NCBI RefSeq assembly: GCF_011386835.1
Contig: NC_088797.1
Span: forward strand, 32,488,001-32,552,000
DNA length: 64,000 nucleotides
Direction of reading: 5' to 3'
Origin: Chrysemys picta bellii
Taxonomy: Eukaryota
The notes beneath the pieces are model-generated. The model ran no database searches, was not told where the DNA came from, and saw only the letters and a list, made by a program, of their open reading frames with translations. Made by a program: the position numbers and the translations under genes. Shown in pieces: positions 1-45,695 of the stretch (positions are counted from its first letter, which is position 1; each line of letters opens with the position of its first letter).

Positions 1-1
1 G

Positions 2-361
2 AAGCCGTACACAGGCAGCCTGGACAGGAGTCAGGACCTGTTCAACTACAGGCTGAGCAAGTGCCGAATGGTGGTGGAATGTGCATTTGGACGTTTAAAA
101 GCGCGCTGGCGCAGCTTACTGACTCGCTCAGACCTCAGCGAAAAGAATATCCCCATTGTTATTGCTGCTTGCTGTGCGCTCCACAATATCTATGAGAGTA
201 AGGGGGAGACCTTTATGGCGGGGTGGGAGGTTGAGGCAACTCGCCTGGCCGCTGATTACGCGCAGCCAGACACCAGGGCGGTTAGAGGAGCACAGCAGGG
301 CGCGGTGCACATCAGAGAAGCTTTGAAAACGAGTTTTGTGACTGGCCAGGCTACTGTGTGA
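2..361 (+). CDS. Harbinger (HARBI1-like) DDE transposase, C-terminal part
   Basis: Frame from base 2 reads KPYTGSLDRSQDLFNYRLSKCRMVVECAFGRLKARWRSL...IAACCALHNIYE, the typical Harbinger transposase C-terminal motifs; no disruption up to the stop at 361. Confidence 0.92.
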   Translation, partial: KPYTGSLDRSQDLFNYRLSKCRMVVECAFGRLKARWRSLLTRSDLSEKNIPIVIAACCALHNIYESKGETFMAGWEVEATRLAADYAQPDTRAVRGAQQGAVHIREALKTSFVTGQATV

Positions 362-634
362 AACTTCTGTTTGTTTCTCCTTGATGAACCCTCCAAACTC
401 CCTCCCCCCCCCCCCCCCCCGACCCGGTTCACTCTACTTCCCTGTAAACCAACCACCCCACCCCACCCTCCCCTCCCTAATTCGAGCACCGCTTGCAGAG
501 GCAATAAAGTAATTGTTTTTTCACATTCATGCATTCTTTATTAGTTCCTCACAGAAGTAGGGGGATAATTGCCAAGGTAGCCTGGGATGGGTGGGGGAGG
601 AGGGATGAAAAAGGACACACTGCATTTTAAAACT

Positions 635-1417
635 TTAACTCTTATTGAAGGCCAGCCTTCTGATGCTTGGGCGATCATCTGCGGTGGAGTGACTGGGTGG
701 ACGGAGGCCCCCCCACCGTGTTCTTGGGCGTCTTGGTGAGGAGGCTATGGAACTTGGGGAGGAGGGCTGTTGGTTAAACAGGGGCTGTAGCGGCGGTCTC
801 TGCTCCTGCTGCCTTTCCTGCAGCTCAACCATACGCTCGAGCAGATCAGTTTGATGCTCCAGCAGACGGAGCATTGACTCTTGCCGTCTGTCTGCAAGCT
901 GACGCCACCTATCGTCTTCAGCCCGCCACTTGCTCTTTTCATCCCGCCATTCAGCCCGCCACCTCTCCTCTCGTTCATATTGTGCTTTTCTCATGTCCGA
1001 CATTGACTGCCTCCACGCATTCTGCTGTGCTCTATCAGCGTGGGAGGACATCTGCAGCTCCGTGAACATATCGTCCCTCGTCCTACGTTTTCTCTTTCTA
1101 ATGTTCACTAGCCTCTGCGAAGGAGAAACATTTGCAGCTGGTGGAGGAGAAGGGAGAGGTGGTTAAAAAAGACACATTTTAGAGAACAATGGGTACACTC
1201 TTTCATTACAAGGTCGCATATTTCGGCTTGCAGGCAGCCATGGTAGGCCACAGTGTTTTGGCTTTTTTAACCTTCTTAACATGCGGGAAAGGTTTCAAAC
1301 AGCAGCGCATTTCCCATATCAAGGATGAATTGCGTTGTCCATTTAAAATGGGTTTTCAATGTAAAAGGAGGGGCTGCAGTTTCCCGGTTAACATGTGGCA
1401 CAAACCCAAGTAAACCA

Positions 1418-1448
<31 letters not shown>

Positions 1449-2514
1449 ACATGATTCTCTGGGATGATCACTTCACCCTTCCCCTCCACCGCGTGGTTAA
1501 CAGCGGGGAACATTTCTGTTCAGAAGAGCAGGAACGGGCGCCTCTGAATGTCCCCTTAATAAAATCACCCCATTTCAACCAGGTGACCATGAATGATATC
1601 ACTCTCCTGAGGATAACAAAGAGAGATAAGGAATGGATATTGTCTGCATGCCAGCAAACACCGGGACCATACGCTGCCATGCTTTGTTATGCAATGATTC
1701 CAGACTACGTGCTACTGGCCTGGCGTGGTAAAGTGTCCTACCATGGCGGACGGGATAAGGCAGCCCTCCCCAGAAACCTTTTGCAAAGGCTTTGGGAGTA
1801 CATAAAGGAGAGCTTTCTGGAGATGTCCCTGGAGGATTTCCGCTCCATCCCCATACACGTTAACAGACTTTTCCAGTAGATGTACTGGCCGCGATTGCCA
1901 GGGCAAATTAATCATTAAACACGCTTGCTTTTAAACCATGTGTAATGTTTACAAATATTTACAAAGGTACAGTCACCAGAGGTCTCCTGTGTGCCCTGAG
2001 GGTCTTGGGTGAGTTCGGGGGTTACTGGTTCCAGGTCCAGGGTAACAAACATATCCTGGCTGTTGGGGAAACCGGTTTCTCCGCTTCCTTGCTGCTGTGA
2101 GCTACCTACAGTACCTCCATCCTCATCTTCCTCGTTCCCCGAACCGTCTTCCCTGTGTGTTTCTCCAGTGAGAGAGTCATAGCACACGGTTGGGGTAGTG
2201 GTGGCTGCACCCCCTAGGATCGCATGCAGCTCCGCGTAGAAGCGGCAAGTTTGCGGCTCTGCCCCGGACCTTCCGTTTGCTTCTCTGGCTTTGTGGTAAG
2301 CTTGCCGTAGCTCCTTAATTTTCACGCGGCACTGCCGTGTGTCCCTGTTATGGCCTCGGTCCTTCATGGCCTTGGAGACCTTTTCTAATACTTTGCCATT
2401 TCTTTTACTGCTACGGAGTTCAGCTAGCACTGATTCATCTCCCCATATGGCGAGCAGATCCCGTACCTCCTGTTCGGTCCATGCTGGAGCTCTTTTGCGA
2501 TCCTGGGACTCCAT
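635..2514 (-). CDS. Harbinger Myb/SANT-like (MADF/trihelix) DNA-binding protein, two exons: complement(join(635..1137,1977..2514)), ~346 aa
   Basis: Exon 1 MESQDRKRAPAWTEQEVRDLLAIWGDESVLAELRSSKRN...CRVKIKELRQAY (Myb/SANT-like). Phase-1 donor TCTG|GTGACT at 1977/1976 and acceptor CCACCAG|CTGCA at 1138/1137 join in frame to exon 2 (RKRKRRTRDDMF... coiled coil). No internal stops. Confidence 0.88.
1240..1879 (+). CDS. Third Harbinger gene, BEN-domain-like small protein: join(1240..1242,1583..1879), 99 aa
   Basis: GCCATG|GTAGGC donor at 1242/1243; acceptor CATTTCAACCAG|GTG at 1582/1583; ATTAAA at 1914-1919. Homologous gene with the same intron position in element B (36/98 identical, ungapped). 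BEN assignment is by visual motif match only. Confidence 0.75.
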
Positions 2515-3010
2515 CACGGTTACCTGTGCTGATGAGCTCTGCGTGGTCACCTGTGCTCTCCACGCTGAGCAAACAGGAAATGAAATTCAAACATTCGCGG
2601 GTCTTTTCCTGTCTACCTGGTCAGTGCATCTGAGTTGAAAGCGCTGTCCAGAGCGGTCACAATGAAGCACTGTGGGATAGCTCCCGGAGGCCAATAACGT
2701 CGAATTCCATCCACACTACCCCAATTCCGACCCGCAAAGGCCGGTTTTATCGCTAATCCCCTCGTCGGAGGTGGTGTAAAGAAACCAGTTTAAAGGACCC
2801 TTTAAGTCGAAAGAAAGGGCTTTGTCGTGTGGACGTGTCCAGGCTTAATTCGATTTAACGCTGCTAAAGTCGACCTAAACCCGTAGTGTAGACCAGGCCC
2901 AAGATTGGAGGGTCATTTTTCTGTGGTGCTGGGCACTGCACAGGCACCTACTGAGAGAGAATCCCTGTCCCAGAGAGCTCACAGGCTAAGTAGTCAAGCT
3001 TAGTGAGGGG

Positions 3011-20919: not shown

Positions 20920-21379
20920 AAAGAACAAAAAGATTGATCTAGTACTCTGAGCTGCATTGAGAACCTGGGTAGCTCAGTCCTGTTCCCCACTTCATGATTG
21001 AGGCCTTGGCTACACTTGCGAGTTACAGCACTGTAAAGGCTCCCCCAGCGCTGTAACTCACTCCCCGTCCACACTGGCAAGGCATTTGCAGCGCTGCATA
21101 TACTCCACCTCTCCGAGAGGAATAACAAGTGCAGCTCTGCCGCTGCAGCACCAGTGTGGCCGGCCACTGCTCTGTGAATGGCCTTCAGAATTATTCAGCA
21201 GTATCCCACAATGCCTGTTCTAGCCACTCTGGTCATCAGTTCAAACTCTACTGCCCTGGCCTCAGGTAACCAACCATGTGACTGACCCTTTACATTCCCT
21301 GGGAATTTTAAAAATCCCCTTCCTGTTTGCTCAGCCTGGCGTGGTGTGGAGTGCTATCAGCGAATCTTTCCAGGTGACC

Positions 21380-23140
21380 ATGCCTCCAAGCGAGCCCCAG
21401 CATGGAGCAATGGCGAGTTGCTGGACCTAAACAGTGTTTGCGGGGAGGAAGCTGTCCAGTCCCAGCTGCGCTCCAGACGTAGGAATTACGATACCTTCGG
21501 GAAGGTTATCAAAGGACATGTTGGAAAAGTGCCGTGACCGGGATGCCCTGCAGTACAGGATTAAAGTGAAGGAGCTGCGGAGTACCTACTGCAAAGCCCG
21601 CGACGCAAACGGCCGCTCGGGTGCACCCCCGTGACCTACCGATTCTACAAAGAGCTGGATGCGATACTTGGGGTTAACCCCACCTCCACTCCGAGCACCA
21701 CCATGGACACTTCAGAGTCGGGGGGGGGGGGGGGAGGGGGAGAGGAGGAAAACGGGAGTGATGGTGGTGTGCCAGATGGAGACATCCCAGGAGCTCTTCT
21801 CGAGCCAGATGGAAGGTAGCCAGTCGCAGCGGCCGGTACTTGGTAGAGGACAAACGGAAGAGCAGGTTCCCGGTAAGTGTGTTTTTTTTTGTTTGTTTGT
21901 TTTTTTCGGGAAGGAATTTTTTCAGTGCGGGCTCTTTGGGAGAGGAGGGTTAGGCATGCATGCCTAGATGCGGAATAGTGCATTGATGTGGTTCATCACA
22001 TCGTAATAATCGGCCTTGGTAATCTCCTCAAATGTCTCATCCAGAACGTGTGCAATGCGCTTGCGCAGGTTTATCGGGAGAACCACCATGGTCCTTGTCC
22101 CAGCCAGGCTAACGTGTCCGTGCCACTGTGCCACGAGGGGTGGGGGGACCATTGTTGCACACAGGCAAGCTGCATGGGGGCCAGGACAGAAGCCGTATTG
22201 CAGTAGAAGACCCTCCCTTGCTTCCCAGGTCACCCTCAGCAGCGAGATATCTTCCAGGACAAAGTCCTGTGGAAAATGTTGGAACAGTGTTTCAGTGTAG
22301 GTGCCCCCTGAAGCTGTTGGCTCTCCCCAAGGCACAGAAACCCAGAGGACAGTGCAGCCCTGAAACAATCAGTCCCTCTTACTCACCATTTTGAGGCTCC
22401 CATGGGATGTGTGTGCTCTGTTTTGGACGGGAAAATTATGCTATGTGTAGACCCTGTGTGTTTTCTACTCCTCAAGTGCGGGGGGGAATCATTACTCTGT
22501 CTGGTATAAACAATGCTGCCTCTGTTAAATGTTGCATTTTGCCTATACAGCTGCATCAAGCTTGAGACCTCAGCCATCCCTCTTATCGCCTGCTCAGAGA
22601 CTGCAAAGACTCAGGAAGAGACCGCGAAAAAGCAAAGAAGACATGCTGTGGCAATCTATTAAAGAGAATGAGAGAGCACAGGACTGGAGGGAGAGAGAAA
22701 GCAGGATCTGCCAGGAAAATGCAGCGCACCGGTGGCAAAGCACTGATAGGCTCATAAGCATCCTGGAGCACCAAGCAGACGCTATCCAGGAGCTGGCAGC
22801 CACGCAGAAAGAGGAGCAGTACCGCAAACGCCACCCCCACCCCCAAGCCCTTGTCCCAAAACTTTCCATTGTGCCCCACTGTCACCTCCAACCCACTTTC
22901 CCCAACTTCTGTGTTCTTCATGCCACCTGCTGCCTCCAACACCACTATCTTCACCATCCAGCCCTGAAAACCACGACCCTTACCCTCTGCACTCAACTGC
23001 CATCACCATGCCGTATAGCTATCCTGAAGTGCAGCACTCACTGCACAGCACACCACACAGGACATACGCGGATCTGTGATTGTACTGTTCCCCACTCCAC
23101 CCCCTTGTTTCTTTTCAATAAATGGATTCTTTGGCTTTGA
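21380..23140 (+). pseudogene. Harbinger B Myb/SANT-like gene, frameshifted; exon 1 21380..21872, exon 2 from 22551
   Basis: KRAPAWSNGELLDL..., QYRIKVKELRSTYCKA, RFYKELDAILG in shifting frames; donor CG|GTAAGT and acceptor TATACAG|CTGCA match element A; exon 2 RLQRLRKRPRKSKEDM. Confidence 0.85.
21964..22389 (-). CDS. Third Harbinger gene (BEN-domain-like) of element B: complement(join(21964..22266,22387..22389)), 101 aa
   Basis: AAAATG|GTGAGTAAG donor at 22387/22386; acceptor TTTTCCACAG|GAC at 22267/22266; open frame DFVLEDISLLRVT...PGPHAACLCATMVP...HINALFRI*, homologous to 1583..1879. Confidence 0.75.
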
Positions 23141-23276
23141 AAACATTCTTTATTATTGCATAAAGTAAAAGACTCCTTAGCCCAGGAAATAAACAGGCAC
23201 TGCAAGTCTGCTTAGCAAACACTGATTCCTAAAGATTGGAACTACTGCACTTCACTCCCGTGCAGGGCACCAGATA

Positions 23277-24522
23277 TCACTGCTGGTTTTCAGCCTCAAA
23301 TTGCTCCTTCAAGGCATCCCTAATCCTTACAGGGGGCCAGCGCGGGGCTGCAATAGGCCTGCTCTCTGGCTGTGCAAATTCAGCCTCCAGGTGTTGAACC
23401 TCGGAGGTCCATGCCTGAGTGAAGCTTTCACCCTTCCCTTCACAATATTATGGAGGGCACAGCACACGGATATAACCACAGGGATGCTGTTTTTGGCCAA
23501 ATCCAGCTTCCCATACAGAGATTGCCAGCGGCCCTTTAAACAGCCAAAAGCACACTCCACAGTCATTCAGCACCAGCTCAGCCTGTAGTTGAACTGTTCC
23601 TTGCTGCTGTCAAGGCTCCCTGTGTAGGGTTTCATGAGCCACAGCATTAACGGGTAAGTGGGATGTCCAAGGATCACAATAGGCATTTCAACTTCCCCTA
23701 CCATGATCTTCCGCTCTGGGAAAAAAGTCCCGGCCTGCATCTTCCTGAACAGCCAAGTGTTCTGAAAGATGCGTCCGTCATGCACCTTTCCGGGCCAGCC
23801 TGAGTTAATGTCAATTAAACGCCCATGGTGATCCACAAGTGCCTGGAGAACCATAGAGAAATACCCCTTCCGATTAACGTACTCGGATCCTAGGTGTGGT
23901 GGTGCCAGAATAGGAATGTGTGTCCCATCTATTGCCCCTCCACAGTTGGGGAACCCCATTTATGCAAAGCCATCCACTATTTCCTGCACGTTACCCAGAG
24001 TCATGGTTCTTCTGAGTAGGATGCGATTAATGGCCTTGCAAACTTGCATCAACGCGATTCCAACGGTCGACTTTCCCACTCCAAACTGGTTTGCGACTGA
24101 CTGGTAGCTGTCTGGAGTTGCCAGCTTCCAGATTGCAATAGCCACCTGCTTCTCCACTGGCAGGGCAGCTCTCAATCTCGTGTCCATGCGCCGCAGGGTG
24201 GGGGCAAGCTCCTCACACAGTCCCATGAAAGTGGCTTTTCTCATCCGAAAGTTCTGCAGCCACTGCTCGTCATCCCAGACTTCCATGACGATGTGATCCC
24301 ACCACTCGGTGCTTGTTTCCCGAAACAAAAGCGGCATTCCCCGGTGCTGAGCATGTCCGTGAATGCCACAAGCAATTTCGTGTCATACGCATTATGCGGC
24401 TCGATAGCATTGTCGGACTCCTCACTCTCACTGTCACTTTGGATCTTAAGGAATAGTTCAACAGCCAAACGTGACGTTCTGGCGAGACTCGTCAGCATAC
24501 GCCTCAGCAGTTCGGATTCCAT
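23277..24522 (-). pseudogene. Harbinger B transposase, disrupted
   Basis: Fragments WLQNFRMRKATF, GFPNCGGAIDGTHIPI (first catalytic D), GWPGKVHD, VECAFGCLKGRW, separated by frameshifts and stops. Confidence 0.92.
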
Positions 24523-25429
24523 TTCCCGCAGACAGATCGCGCTGCACAGAAACCGTTGAAAGATGGCGCCAAAGGTGGATGGAAACAAAGGGATTTCTGG
24601 GATGCGAAGCGATGCATCACGGGGGATTGGGACAGGACCCAGAATCCCCCGCACCCACGCCCACAACCCACGGCACCAGAATGGGAAGAGGTGCTCTGTG
24701 GGATAGCTGCCCATGATGCACTGCTCCCAATAGTGCTGCAATCGCTGCAAATGTGGCCACGACAGTGCGCTGGGCAGCGGTCTGTGTGGACAGACTGCAG
24801 TGCTTTCCCTATTCAGCTGCACGAAGTCAGGTTTAACTCACAGCGCTGTACATCTGCAAGTGTAGCCAAGGCCTTAGATTAAAGAGTGGAAGACATGAGC
24901 AGGGCTTTAGTGCTGCTCACTTCATATAGCTGAAATCTGTCGGTCTCTGCGCCAGTTTCTTTGTCTGTAATGTGGTGATGATACTTCTAAGGCAGTTATG
25001 GCTGAATGAGTCAATATTTGAGAAGTGCTGGGACATCCTTGCATGGAAGGCCCAAGTGTTATTTCCACCTGGCTTTACAGTGATGACTCGGTGTGTGAGG
25101 CAGGACTGTGCTGCTGCTTTGTTGTTACTGCACCTTTGAGGGTGTAGTGCTGGATCTGTAATTGTAGGAAGAAGCAAGATGCTTTTTAAGAGGAAATGTA
25201 CAGACTCTCCTGGGGCTCCATTCTGCAAGAACCCAAAGCAATTTCGGTGCAGCTGCCTTGGGGGTGGAGCAGGCTCATTTTTTAACAGATAGGGTAGTGC
25301 CCGAGTGGGAGGGGGTGATCAATGCAGGGATTATTCAGATATGGGTGCCAGCTTTGTAAAGGCAGGGGCGGCCACGCTGCCACAGACTTCGCATACCTTG
25401 GAACTGCGCGACCCTTATGCAGTGGTCGC

Positions 25430-25624
25430 CGGAAATAGCCGAAAGGGTGTGGAGTTCCGAAACTGAAGATGCGAAACGCCCGAGAGTTTCCGAATCTAAG
25501 GCGGAGTTACCCGAAGTTGTACGAGCGCTTCCGGCGCGAAGGCGGAAATAGCCGAACCAAACAGCTGCTGTGGCGGAAGGCGGAAATGCCCGAGTGGTGG
25601 CGGAAAGACCCGATCGCTGCCAAG
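25430..25624 (+). promoter_or_regulatory. ZNHIT2 CpG promoter with repeated CGGA-N5-CCGA motifs
   Basis: Five copies at 25430, 25502, 25543, 25581 and 25601, most with an ETS-like CGGAAA core. Confidence 0.6.
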
Positions 25625-26887
25625 ATGGAGGCGGCCGAGCCCTGCGGCCTGTGCCTGCAGGAGCGGGCCCCCTACACATGCCCCCGCTGTAACATGCGTT
25701 TCTGTTCGGTGCCGTGTTACCGGCGTCACGGGGCCTGCGCCGAGGCTTTCCACCGCCGGCAGCTGCTGCTCCGGCTCCAGGGCCAGCGGGGGGACCCGGC
25801 CTCCCGAACCCGCCTGAAAGAGGCGCTGCTCCGGCTGCGGGAGCTACGCGAGCTCGAGGACGCGGAGCCCCAGCTAGGCCGCGACCTGGAGGACCAGGAC
25901 GACGGTCTGTGGGAGCGGCTCAGTCCGGCCGAAAAGGCCGCCTTTCAGCGCCTGCTGAGCAGCGGGGAGATTGGAACCTTCCTGCCCCCCTGGAGGCCCT
26001 GGTGGCGGGGATGGGGCCGGGGGCTGGTCCAGGAGCTGGCGGGTACTGAGGGTGCCCAGGAAGCTGGGGATACCCAGCCCCCTGCAGGCACCCAGAAGCC
26101 AGAGAAGAAGATCCCAGACTCAGCACCTATCCACCAGCCACCGGTACCCCAAGGTTCTTACCCCCCCACGGGCACCCGGCAGCCAGAGGAGAGCTCAGGC
26201 ATGGCACCCACCCAGCAGCCTGAAGAAATGCCCAGCCCAGTGCCTGCTGTGCCTGCATCCATTCCACCACTGAGCTCCCTGACCTGCAGCCCAGCCTCAC
26301 CCCTGGTGTGCTTCCAGCTGCCTAATGTCCTCTATGCCTACGTCTTCGCCCTCACCCTCTACAATGGGGACTTGAGTGAAGATGAGCTGCTGCCTGAGTT
26401 CTCTGACATGGTCCTGGGTGTCTGCGGGGCATTGGGTGCCAGGCAGGTCTTCCACTCCACAGCAGAGGCGCTGCAGGCTGCTCTCCAGGCAGTGACAGCC
26501 AGACGGTACCCCGCGTGCCCCTTGGGGAATGCAGGTGCTATGATGGCAGTGGCCCAGATCCTGATGGGGGAGAATCAAAGCAAGCAGAAAGGCTACAGCT
26601 TGGCAGCCCTCTCCCATCTTGCCAGGCTGCTGGGCAAGGCTAAGAAACTGGTGCCCACAGAGGAACGGCCCAGGGTGTATGGTGCCAAGAAGAAGTGTGA
26701 ATTTCTGCTCTCCTGGGTCAATGAGAACCAGGAATCTTTGACTGTCTTGGCCCTAGAGGTACAAAGGGAATATAAAACCCATTTGGAGGCAGTCAAAGAG
26801 GTGGATGTAGTTACCAAAGAACTGCAGAAGATGTGGGGTGGGAAACTGCCCCCTGCAAAAAAGCCATTGATCGAGGAGTTGGACTGA
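25625..26887 (+). CDS. ZNHIT2: Zinc finger HIT-type containing 2, single exon (open frame extends upstream to an ATG at 25469)
   Basis: zf-HIT CGLC...YTCPRCNMRFCSVPCYRRHGAC; SPLVCFQLPNVLYAY; AKKKCEFLLSW; C-terminal KKPLIEELD*; intronless and next to FAU as in human; AATAAA at 27079. Confidence 0.95.
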   Translation: MEAAEPCGLCLQERAPYTCPRCNMRFCSVPCYRRHGACAEAFHRRQLLLRLQGQRGDPASRTRLKEALLRLRELRELEDAEPQLGRDLEDQDDGLWERLSPAEKAAFQRLLSSGEIGTFLPPWRPWWRGWGRGLVQELAGTEGAQEAGDTQPPAGTQKPEKKIPDSAPIHQPPVPQGSYPPTGTRQPEESSGMAPTQQPEEMPSPVPAVPASIPPLSSLTCSPASPLVCFQLPNVLYAYVFALTLYNGDLSEDELLPEFSDMVLGVCGALGARQVFHSTAEALQAALQAVTARRYPACPLGNAGAMMAVAQILMGENQSKQKGYSLAALSHLARLLGKAKKLVPTEERPRVYGAKKKCEFLLSWVNENQESLTVLALEVQREYKTHLEAVKEVDVVTKELQKMWGGKLPPAKKPLIEELD

Positions 26888-45320: not shown

Positions 45321-45695
45321 GGCCATGTCTATACTACACAATTATGTCTACCTAACTTACATCTGCATAAGCCACCACAGGTATTAAATCACTTGTGTCG
45401 GCAGTATGCGTCCTCACCAGGACGCGTGTATCGATCGTACTGTCAGTGAGGAGCATTGTGGGACGGCTCCTGAAAGCCAGTCACAATCAATGAAAGCAAT
45501 GCAGGGTCCGCACGGACACTGCATCAATCTAATTACATCGACCTTGGCTCTCCACCGCTTGGGGAGGTGGTGTTACTAAAGCGCCGCAGAGAGGAACTTA
45601 CGTCAGTGGGAGCCAAACGTAAATGAAGAGATTTCCACAGCTAGGTCGACGCAAAGCATCTTACATCAACCTAACAGTGTAGTGTAGACCAGGCC
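45321..45695. mobile_element. Harbinger-type MITE
   Basis: Termini GGCCATGTCTATACTAC / GTAGTGTAGACCAGGCC; 3-bp TSD TAT; right end identical to that of Harbinger A. Confidence 0.85.

What the first reader, a model, noticed from the sequence alone, without database searches (positions are those of the whole stretch)
1240..1919. Hidden third gene in a Harbinger transposon: a spliced BEN-domain-like protein nested antisense in the Myb-gene intron
Seen: the intron of the element A Myb gene (1138..1976) holds a gene on the opposite strand. GCCATG|GTAGGC (1240-1248) splices via acceptor CATTTCAACCAG| (1582) to a 98-codon exon, followed by ATTAAA (1914). Element B has the same layout (ATG|GTGAGT, phase-0 acceptor). 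The two proteins align without gaps at 36/98 identities (manual count), with many conservative changes. Similarity starts at the acceptors; upstream intron sequence is unrelated. That pattern indicates protein-level constraint. Established: Harbinger elements are classically two-gene (DDE transposase plus Myb/SANT-like protein); BEN domains (BANP, BEND3, Insensitive) are small helical DNA-binding, chromatin-repressor modules. Inference: PGPYAAMLCYAMIP...KVSYHG..DKAALP..LLQRLWEYIKESF....F..I...VNRLF follows the BEN pattern (xGxFAxxLxxxLFP...xxxG..KxxLD..xLxxIxxYVxxxF...W..I..IN). This would be a three-component Harbinger system with a possible autoregulator or anti-silencing factor. I know of no description of it but cannot check the literature.
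Basis: partly seen in the sequence, partly recalled or inferred. Interest (0 to 1): 0.92.

Follow-up and report, generated by a model that had tools for sequence, protein, structure and literature searches.

The report
Harbinger transposon's hidden BEN-domain gene
A turtle Harbinger "jumping gene", a kind long described as carrying two genes, carries a small spliced third gene hidden backwards inside an intron of one of them; selection has kept it, and its 99-residue protein folds like a BEN DNA-binding domain.

Summary
Both Harbinger copies in the window (A: 1-2899; B: 21002-24873, opposite strand) carry a 98-100-codon exon on the transposase strand, inside the intron of the convergent Myb-like gene.

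- **Conservation:** A and B share 37% residues (tblastn E 4e-19). Only this frame is open in all six diverged copies compared. dN/dS is 0.21-0.45, similar to the element's own transposase and Myb genes.
- **Splice signals:** homology starts at an AG acceptor in the four copies compared at the acceptor. A single ATG|GTR donor with a Kozak-type context lies upstream in five.
- **RNA:** assembled contigs of runs guessed to be RNA show the Myb intron removed in 4 of 4 runs. One contig shows the predicted 1242^1583 joint.
- **Fold:** Pfam BEN is not reached by the window's protein. Its AlphaFold model (pLDDT 95.5) matches BEN domains only: Z 11.9 to BEND3 BEN4, and in an unbiased search all five chains with Z>=5 are BEN, the next at 4.1.

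New here: gene models splice the exon to the transposase N-terminus or to host genes. Distant relatives end many fish, amphibian and lungfish proteins.

DNA binding and any role in transposition are inferred. The scan noted the same gene in other windows of this genome. I found no paper describing it.

The parts
1..2899 (+). Harbinger element A, cut at its 5' side by the window start; its right end is the terminal inverted repeat ...GTGTAGACCAGGCC at 2886-2899
   Evidence: Pfam hits DDE_Tnp_4 and Myb_DNA-bind_4; terminal repeat located
2..361 (+). C-terminal 119 codons of the Harbinger DDE transposase, stop at 359-361
   Evidence: PF13359 DDE_Tnp_4, E 2.9e-12
1977..2514 (-). Myb/SANT-like gene, exon 1 (ATG at 2514..2512)
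   Evidence: PF13837, E 7.7e-19; spliced product is 346 aa without an internal stop
1138..1976 (-). Intron of the Myb-like gene, which hosts the third gene on the other strand
   Evidence: Joint 1137^1977 (CT..AC) in contigs of all four runs
635..1137 (-). Myb-like gene, exon 2 (charged, helix-rich C-terminal part; stop at 637..635)
   Evidence: ORF list; in frame with exon 1
1178..1242 (+). Third gene, exon 1. Its 5' limit is unknown and is placed here where conservation with L002 begins. It ends with the start codon ATG at 1240-1242, in the context GCCATG|GTAGGC
   Evidence: 80-88% identity to L002 here against 40-55% in the 5' part of the following intron; ATG|GTR found in five copies
1243..1582 (+). 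Third gene, intron (GT..AG, 340 nt, holds a C-run and a CA microsatellite)
   Evidence: Joint 1241^1582, which also fits one place to the right as GT..AG, in one contig of run X4
1583..1879 (+). Third gene, exon 2: 98 codons plus stop. With the initiator Met this gives a 99-aa protein that is a BEN-fold domain and nothing else
   Evidence: Conservation; AlphaFold model pLDDT 95.5; BEN structural matches
1914..1919 (+). ATTAAA polyadenylation-type signal, 35 nt after the stop; conserved in L002
21002..24873 (-). Harbinger element B, complete between terminal repeats. Its transposase and Myb exon 1 are broken by stops and frameshifts
21964..22266 (-). Element B third gene, exon 2 (100 codons plus stop), intact
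22387..22389 (-). Element B third gene, start codon directly followed by the donor GTGAGT; the intron is 22386..22267

Best explanation
This is a real third protein-coding gene of a clade of reptile Harbinger (PIF/Harbinger) DNA transposons.

**Gene structure.** It lies on the transposase strand, nested in the single intron of the convergently transcribed Myb-like gene. It has two exons. Exon 1 ends exactly with the initiator ATG. A 120-445-nt intron is removed, and a phase-0 acceptor joins 98-100 codons followed by a poly(A) signal. The product, 99 aa in element A, is a single BEN-fold domain with no other module.

**What is shown.** The structure, its conservation under purifying selection across diverged element lineages, the BEN fold of the model, use of the Myb intron, and one contig with the predicted splice.

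**What is inferred.** By analogy with single-BEN ('BEN-solo') factors, the protein would bind specific DNA. The most likely targets are sites in the element itself (ends or internal promoters) or in host chromatin. It would tune expression or transposition of the element, most likely as a repressor or architectural factor, because it carries no effector domain.

**Further consequences.** The nested antisense position may make its transcription and that of the Myb-like gene interfere with each other (inferred). The strong acceptor plus poly(A) signal also makes the exon a ready-made terminal exon. Annotators' gene models join it to the transposase N-terminus and to host genes.
For: - Layout and homology in two elements of the window: 37.5% identity, E 3.8e-19.
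- The same layout, with the Myb exon antisense just downstream, occurs in independent contigs L001, L002, L004 and L008.
- 108 database relatives at E<=1e-3.
- dN/dS is 0.21-0.45 for all ORF pairs with computable dS. In the same element pair the transposase gives 0.29 and Myb 0.38-0.44. Only frame +1 is open in 6 of 6 copies.
- An AG acceptor sits exactly where homology starts in the four copies compared there, and a fifth (L004) has one 6 nt upstream, in frame.
- One ATG|GTR, with a purine at -3 and G at +4, lies upstream in five copies. The chance of at least one per copy is about 0.16.
- There is an island of conservation around it.
- RNA-type contigs show the Myb intron joint in 4 of 4 runs and the 1242^1583 joint in one contig, at depth 74.
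- Fold: pLDDT 95.5. BEN domains fill the top of Foldseek's list. Z is 11.9, 11.8 and 10.5 to BEND3 BEN4 and BEN3, and 8.8 to BANP. In the unbiased search only BEN chains reach Z>=5.
- PF10523 is the only family hit by more than 2 of the 55 members, namely 14. BEN clusters top the Atlas search.
Against: - The window's own protein gets no Pfam BEN hit, and no family member reaches the gathering score. A sequence profile finds no BEN chain in the PDB.
- The splice is seen in one short contig of one run. That run is only guessed to be RNA, and just 22 letters lie on the shorter side of the joint.
- The transcription start is unknown.
- Two Malaclemys gene models reach the exon from other upstream exons rather than from the ATG mini-exon.
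- Element B's product is acidic (pI 5.9, against 9.0 for A), although B is a decayed copy.
- The intact state of B's exon is not itself evidence. With at least 6 disruptions in about 2.1 kb of B's other coding sequence, about 0.9 would be expected in 303 nt, so P(none) is about 0.4 (my count).
- DNA binding, targets and any effect on transposition are untested. The homodimer prediction gave no verdict.
Confidence: 0.75

Rival explanations
1. The exon is not a gene of its own but an alternative last exon of the transposase gene. A donor inside the transposase coding region (CAG|GTR after '...WWDRIVLQ') would splice in phase to the same acceptor. The product would be a truncated transposase N-terminus fused to BEN, for example a regulator that competes with the full transposase.
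For: - The exon is on the same strand as the transposase and downstream of it.
- NCBI models LOC128825970 X1 and X2 of Malaclemys join 'IVLQ' to the exon.
- The donor CAG|GTATGG / CAG|GTGTGG is present in L008 and L002, and both sites are phase 0.
- Other predicted proteins (P0005, P0006) also join transposase N-terminal sequence to the exon.
Against: - The models use different donors, after 'IVLQ', 'DIMV' and 'AAVGQ', which suggests predictor choice.
- Element B has only GAA|GTCTGG at that place.
- The conserved ATG|GT island with a Kozak-type context, and the contig carrying 1242^1583, are not explained by this rival.
- The two modes could coexist.
Confidence: 0.12
2. The exon is a passenger: a host BEN exon once captured by a Harbinger and carried along without any use to the element. 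On this reading the similarity reflects descent, and the gene models are exon-trap artefacts.
For: - DNA transposons do capture host fragments (general knowledge).
- Distant relatives are C-terminal domains of many cellular proteins in fish, amphibians and lungfish.
- Many turtle hits are chimeric gene models.
Against: - Synonymous sites between lineages are saturated (pS 0.59-0.87) while pN is 0.27-0.51.
- The frame is open in 6 of 6 copies, and dN/dS equals that of the element's essential genes.
- Splice sites, start codon and poly(A) signal are kept across lineages whose introns no longer align.
Confidence: 0.08
3. The conserved stretch is not coding on the + strand. It would instead be an intronic control element of the Myb-like gene, or an exon on the - strand.
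For: It lies inside the Myb intron. One antisense frame is open in one copy, L002.
Against: - All - strand frames carry stops in 5 of 6 copies.
- Codon-position identity follows 2nd > 1st > 3rd for the + frame.
- A confident globular fold is predicted from the + frame.
- The Myb splice skips the whole region in 4 of 4 runs.
Confidence: 0.02

Closest known systems
Canonical two-gene Harbinger/PIF elements (Harbinger3_DR of zebrafish; PIF and Pong of plants)
   Same: DDE_Tnp_4 transposase plus a Myb/SANT-like DNA-binding protein, short terminal inverted repeats, and separate genes within one element. Reviews of vertebrate Harbingers describe two genes (PMC9179366, PMC9392472).
   Different: Here a third, spliced gene is nested antisense in the Myb-gene intron and encodes a BEN-fold protein. 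The papers I could search describe nothing of the kind.
BEN-solo factors (Drosophila Insensitive, Elba1/2; mammalian BEND5/BEND6)
   Same: One BEN domain and no other recognised domain. BEN is established as a sequence-specific DNA-binding domain (Dai et al. 2013, cited in PMC11601247). The model aligns to BEND6 (Z 7.4), Insensitive (Z 6.9) and Bsg25A/Elba1 (Z 6.8).
   Different: The protein is much shorter, at 99 aa, with no N-terminal region. It is encoded by a transposon in many copies. Identity to any solved BEN is below 20%. DNA binding, dimerisation and repression are untested; the dimer prediction gave no verdict.
BEND3 BEN4 domain (PDB 7w27, 7v9i)
   Same: It is the best structural match: Z 11.8-11.9, rmsd 2.2-2.4 A over 87-90 of 98 residues.
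   Different: 14% sequence identity. BEND3 is a four-BEN host chromatin repressor. No evidence links the two beyond the fold.
Host-transposase fusion genes formed by exon capture (Cosby et al. 2021, from my own knowledge; not read here)
   Same: A transposon-borne exon with a strong acceptor becomes the last exon of host transcripts. Gene models end in this exon after kinase, TEDC1, PFKFB, Rab-like, glycine-transporter and (in Gekko) KDM4B-like parts.
   Different: The captured module is an accessory BEN gene, not the transposase's DNA-binding domain. Most of these fusions are unverified predictions.

Membership tests
BEN domain (Pfam PF10523) | Match to the PF10523 profile at or above its gathering score (23.2 bits) | tested here: not met
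   No hit for the window's protein even at E<=1. 14 of 55 family members hit BEN below threshold, best E 0.0026. Full-length relative P0039 scores 20.8 bits, E 4.7e-4.
BEN domain (Pfam PF10523) | BEN fold: compact, mostly helical domain of about 90-100 residues with a short beta element | tested here: met
   Model pLDDT 95.5, five helices and one short strand. Z 11.9 / rmsd 2.2 A / 87 residues to BEND3 BEN4, and all 13 entries listed are BEN. Of 48,161 chains, only five reach Z>=5, all BEN, and the next is at 4.1.
BEN domain (Pfam PF10523) | Sequence-specific DNA binding | not testable with these tools
   Needs SELEX, PBM, DAP-seq or EMSA. pI is 9.0 for copy A and 5.9 for decayed copy B.
PIF/Harbinger superfamily | DDE transposase of the DDE_Tnp_4 / Plant_tran type | tested here: met
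   PF13359, E 2.9e-12. Element B and L002 carry the rest of the protein.
PIF/Harbinger superfamily | Second gene encoding a Myb/SANT-like DNA-binding protein | tested here: met
   PF13837, E 7.7e-19. Spliced product is 346 aa, intact. The splice is seen in 4 of 4 runs.
PIF/Harbinger superfamily | Short terminal inverted repeats and a 3-bp target-site duplication (TAA/TWA) | tested here: inconclusive
   Element B has inverted ends GGCCTTGGCTACAC (21002-21015) and GTGTAGCCAAGGCC (24860-24873). Its flanking triplets read TCA and TAA in the element's orientation, one mismatch. Element A shows only its right end.
BEN-solo transcription factors | A single BEN domain as the only recognisable domain | tested here: met
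   The 99-aa product is covered by the BEN model from residue 7 to 98.
BEN-solo transcription factors | Homodimer binding to palindromic sites, and transcriptional repression | tested here: inconclusive
   The two-copy prediction scored 0.01 and the verdict was 'no answer'. No binding data.

The most novel reading that the evidence does not exclude
The Harbinger BEN exon is a mobile terminal-exon cassette (acceptor + BEN domain + poly(A) signal). Besides serving the transposon, it would have repeatedly seeded new BEN-tailed host genes in vertebrates. Candidates are the gecko KDM4B-like-BEN, the fish ATF7IP-BEN and hnRNPUL1-BEN, the lungfish KNOP1-BEN and the zebrafish LOC541387 family. On this reading, a whole subfamily of vertebrate BEN proteins descends from a transposon accessory gene, as HARBI1, NAIF1 and the MSANTD genes descend from the other two Harbinger genes.
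Probability: 0.3. Interest if true: 0.8.

Novelty: new variant of a known kind. Interest (0 to 1): 0.7.

Why it matters
- Harbinger/PIF elements are the textbook two-component DNA transposons, and both of their genes have been domesticated in vertebrates (HARBI1; NAIF1 and the MSANTD genes).
- A conserved third gene means the functional unit of at least one vertebrate Harbinger clade has been incompletely described. Reconstituted two-gene systems may therefore lack a regulator.
- It would also be a clear case of a BEN domain encoded by a cut-and-paste transposon. That gives a testable source for BEN-domain spread and for BEN-tailed fusion genes.
- The gene architecture is an unusual piece of genome compaction: a start codon as the last three bases of exon 1, with the gene nested antisense in a partner gene's intron.
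- All of this can be tested directly with a 99-residue protein and natural element copies.

Tried and rejected
- **Pfam on the ORF and on the longer 184-aa ORF:** only chance-level hits (E > 0.1) for the 98-aa exon and none for the 184-aa ORF.
- **Sequence profile of 55 members against PDB sequences:** no BEN chain, only chance-level hits.
- **Homodimer prediction of the BEN protein:** score 0.01, verdict 'no answer', so no evidence either way.
- **The upstream in-frame ATG at 1189 as the true start:** rejected. In L002 the same ATG runs into a stop before the donor.
- **A coding exon on the - strand:** rejected on stop counts.
- **'Intact in a decayed element' as evidence of selection on copy B:** rejected as not significant, P about 0.4 by my count.
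- **Linking the distant fish, amphibian and gecko relatives to Harbinger context:** this failed. The gene range was too long, or the product was not on record. One 3.9-kb contig (L009) has neighbouring ORFs without any Pfam family.
- **Literature searches** (Harbinger + BEN domain; BEN domain + transposon or transposase; Harbinger + third ORF or ORF3; turtle Harbinger) found no description.
- **My first local alignment** suggested that only about 45 nt around the ATG|GT is conserved between A and L002. A global alignment showed longer conserved blocks interrupted by insertions in L002.
Full report
**1. What is in the window**

Positions 1-2899 are the 3' two-thirds of a Harbinger element (A).
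- The last 119 codons of a DDE_Tnp_4 transposase lie on the + strand and end at 361.
- A Myb/SANT-like gene lies on the - strand (PF13837, E 7.7e-19).
- The right terminal repeat ends at 2899.
- The Myb-like gene has two exons, 2514..1977 and 1137..635. Their spliced product is an intact 346-aa protein.

A second, diverged and decayed element (B) lies at 21002-24873 in the opposite orientation. It sits between inverted ends GGCCTTGGCTACAC and GTGTAGCCAAGGCC.

**2.

- On the + strand inside the Myb intron of A, GCCATG|GTAGGC (ATG at 1240-1242) is followed 340 nt later by CATTTCAACCAG| (1582).
- Then come 98 open codons, a stop at 1877-1879, and ATTAAA at 1914-1919.
- Element B has ATG|GTGAGT (22389..22381), a 120-nt intron, a phase-0 acceptor and 100 open codons.
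- The two exons align without gaps at 37.5% identity, tblastn E 3.8e-19.
- The sequence upstream of the acceptors is unrelated between A and B.

**3. It is a constrained coding exon**

I compared six diverged copies: A, B, an ENA contig (L001), Malaclemys L002, and Logan contigs L004 and L005.
- Only the proposed frame is free of stops in all six. The other five frames carry 1-8 stops each, apart from one antisense frame that is open in L002 alone.
- Codon-position identity between A and B is 0.47/0.58/0.37.
- Nei-Gojobori dN/dS is 0.21-0.45 in all pairs where dS can be computed. Synonymous sites are near saturation between lineages.
- In the A-L002 pair, the exon gives 0.45. The transposase gives 0.29 and the Myb exons 0.38-0.44, so the constraint is of the same order as on the element's known genes.
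- L001, L002, L004 and L008 all show the same layout, with Myb exon 1 antisense just downstream.

**4. The splice signals are conserved**

- In the four copies compared at the acceptor, homology begins at an AG acceptor. L004 has one 6 nt upstream, in frame.
- In five copies (A, B, L001, L002, L004), exactly one ATGGTR lies between the Myb exon 2 side and the acceptor. Each has a purine at -3 and G at +4.
- A shuffled 445-nt stretch holds at least one such hexamer 16% of the time. Four independent lineages all having one is therefore unlikely by chance, roughly 7e-4.
- The A-L002 identity profile is 80-88% over 1178-1257. It falls to 40-55% over 1258-1457, recovers before the acceptor, and is 78-97% through the exon and 3' UTR to 1937.
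- This is the profile expected for exon 1 / intron / exon 2.
- An upstream in-frame ATG at 1189 is not a conserved start, because in L002 it runs into a stop.

**5. RNA-type evidence**

I laid Logan contigs of four runs from four studies on 1-3000. Their RNA nature is a guess by the tool.
- All four contain a contig joining 1137 to 1977 (CT..AC). That is the Myb intron removed, which indicates spliced RNA.
- One contig of run X4 (depth 74, 22 letters on the shorter side) joins 1241 to 1582. The cut also fits one base to the right, giving GT..AG. This is exactly the predicted 1242^1583 splice.
- This is thin but specific support. Contigs cannot give the strand, the transcript start or the expression level.

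**6. The fold is BEN**

- Pfam does not recognise the window's protein.
- A profile search of 1.84 billion representatives found 108 relatives.
- In an alignment of 55 of them (A2), PF10523 BEN is the only family hit by more than two members: 14 hits, all sub-threshold, best E 0.0026.
- AlphaFold2 on that alignment gives pLDDT 95.5 and pTM 0.87, with five helices and a short strand.
- Foldseek's best matches are BEND3, BEND6, NACC1, BANP and Insensitive BEN domains. Their E-values are weak, 0.08 or higher, but TM-scores reach up to 0.67.
- VIA-align gives Z 11.9 (rmsd 2.2 A, 87 residues) and 11.8 to BEND3 BEN4, 10.5 to BEN3, and 8.8 to BANP.
- An exhaustive alignment to 48,161 representative chains finds five with Z>=5, all BEN (BANP, BEND6, Bsg25A, NACC1, BEND3 BD1). 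The next chain is at 4.1.
- A language-model search puts BEN-carrying clusters on top, with score 0.94 and 200 of 256 features shared.
- My conclusion: membership by the Pfam threshold is not met, but membership by fold is met. I file it as a divergent BEN domain.

**7. How the exon is used**

Besides the ATG mini-exon, annotators' models reach the same acceptor from elsewhere.
- *From the transposase:* in Malaclemys, LOC128825970 X1 and X2 splice from a CAG|GTR donor inside the transposase N-terminal coding region ('...WWDRIVLQ|') into the exon. The locus is an internally deleted element, L008.
- *From outside the element:* LOC128826488 X2 splices from an exon about 1.8 kb upstream of the transposase-coding region of L002.
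- *From host genes:* other models end in the exon after kinase, TEDC1, PFKFB, Rab-like and glycine-transporter sequence in turtles (organism confirmed by look-up only for the glycine-transporter model, Mauremys reevesii). Two Gekko species have models ending in it after KDM4B-like sequence.
- Whether these are real isoforms is unverified. They do fit a strong acceptor followed by a poly(A) signal.
- A squamate-type copy (L005) has a transposase remnant just upstream on the same strand. The match is weak, E 0.003.

**8. Wider family**

- Close relatives come from turtles (Chelonia, Malaclemys, Mauremys) and geckos.
- Relatives at 23-29% identity come from zebrafish and other teleosts, sturgeon, lungfish and frogs. 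There they form the C-terminal domain of otherwise unrelated proteins, named ATF7IP, hnRNPUL1-like, KNOP1, ZMYM4, and pyrin-like or zinc-finger proteins.
- I could not obtain their genomic context. The direction of transfer, transposon to host or host to transposon, therefore stays open.

**9. Mechanism**

*Shown:* a conserved, spliced, 99-aa BEN-only protein is encoded by the element.

*Inferred:* BEN domains are sequence-specific DNA binders, and single-BEN factors act as repressors or insulator proteins (established knowledge; Dai et al. 2013 and Aoki et al. 2012, as cited in PMC11601247).
- The most likely role is therefore a DNA-binding regulator of the element. It would bind the element's ends or promoters, or act at host chromatin.
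- The antisense nesting could couple its expression inversely to that of the Myb-like gene.
- I put about 0.75 on 'real selected BEN-fold gene' and about 0.4 on the specific DNA-binding-regulator mechanism.

**10. Novelty**

- Reviews of vertebrate Harbingers describe two genes (PMC9179366, PMC9392472).
- None of my searches found a BEN gene in a Harbinger. Repbase and Dfam could not be consulted.
- The scan's own notes show the same gene was flagged in other windows of this genome, and two follow-up agents reached the same reading. Those are not independent evidence.
- Copy B being intact in a decayed element (note s1-318382) is not significant by my estimate, P about 0.4.

Noticed in passing
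window 45682-45695: A third exact copy of the Harbinger end motif GTGTAGACCAGGCC, with no transposase, Myb or BEN match nearby in my tblastn. It may be the end of a non-autonomous derivative or MITE.
   Followed up: no
window 25469-26887 (+): A 472-codon single ORF with a HIT zinc finger (PF04438, E 7e-9), GC-rich. It starts about 600 bp beyond the transposase-side end of element B and looks like a host ZNHIT-type gene.
   Followed up: partly
window 635-2550 compared with L002 13221-15251: Within one element pair, synonymous divergence differs strongly by gene. It is 0.24 for the BEN exon, 0.35 for the transposase, and 0.78-0.82 for the Myb exons that surround the BEN exon. This suggests recombination or mosaicism between Harbinger lineages.
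   Followed up: no
L008 7963-10471 (Malaclemys): An internally deleted Harbinger keeps the transposase N-terminus, the whole Myb-like gene and the BEN exon. NCBI annotates it as a two-isoform gene joining the transposase N-terminus to BEN.
   Followed up: partly
P0114 / P0035 (Gekko japonicus, G. kuhli): A KDM4B-like JmjN/JmjC protein model ends in a BEN exon of this family in two gecko species. This is a candidate conserved host-transposon fusion gene.
   Followed up: partly
L009 1-3942 (Logan contig): A 189-aa ORF with a fish-type BEN domain is followed on the same strand by ORFs of 412 aa and at least 196 aa that match no Pfam family.
   Followed up: partly
window 1407-1452 and 400-420: A C-run plus (CA)n microsatellite lies inside the BEN-gene intron, and a long C-run lies in the transposase 3' UTR. 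Assembled contigs break there.
   Followed up: no
window 1581/1582: One contig of run X1 carries unrelated sequence directly before the acceptor (loose end ATATCCTAAATGTAAGAGAAA). This would fit use of the acceptor from another upstream exon, or a different copy.
   Followed up: no
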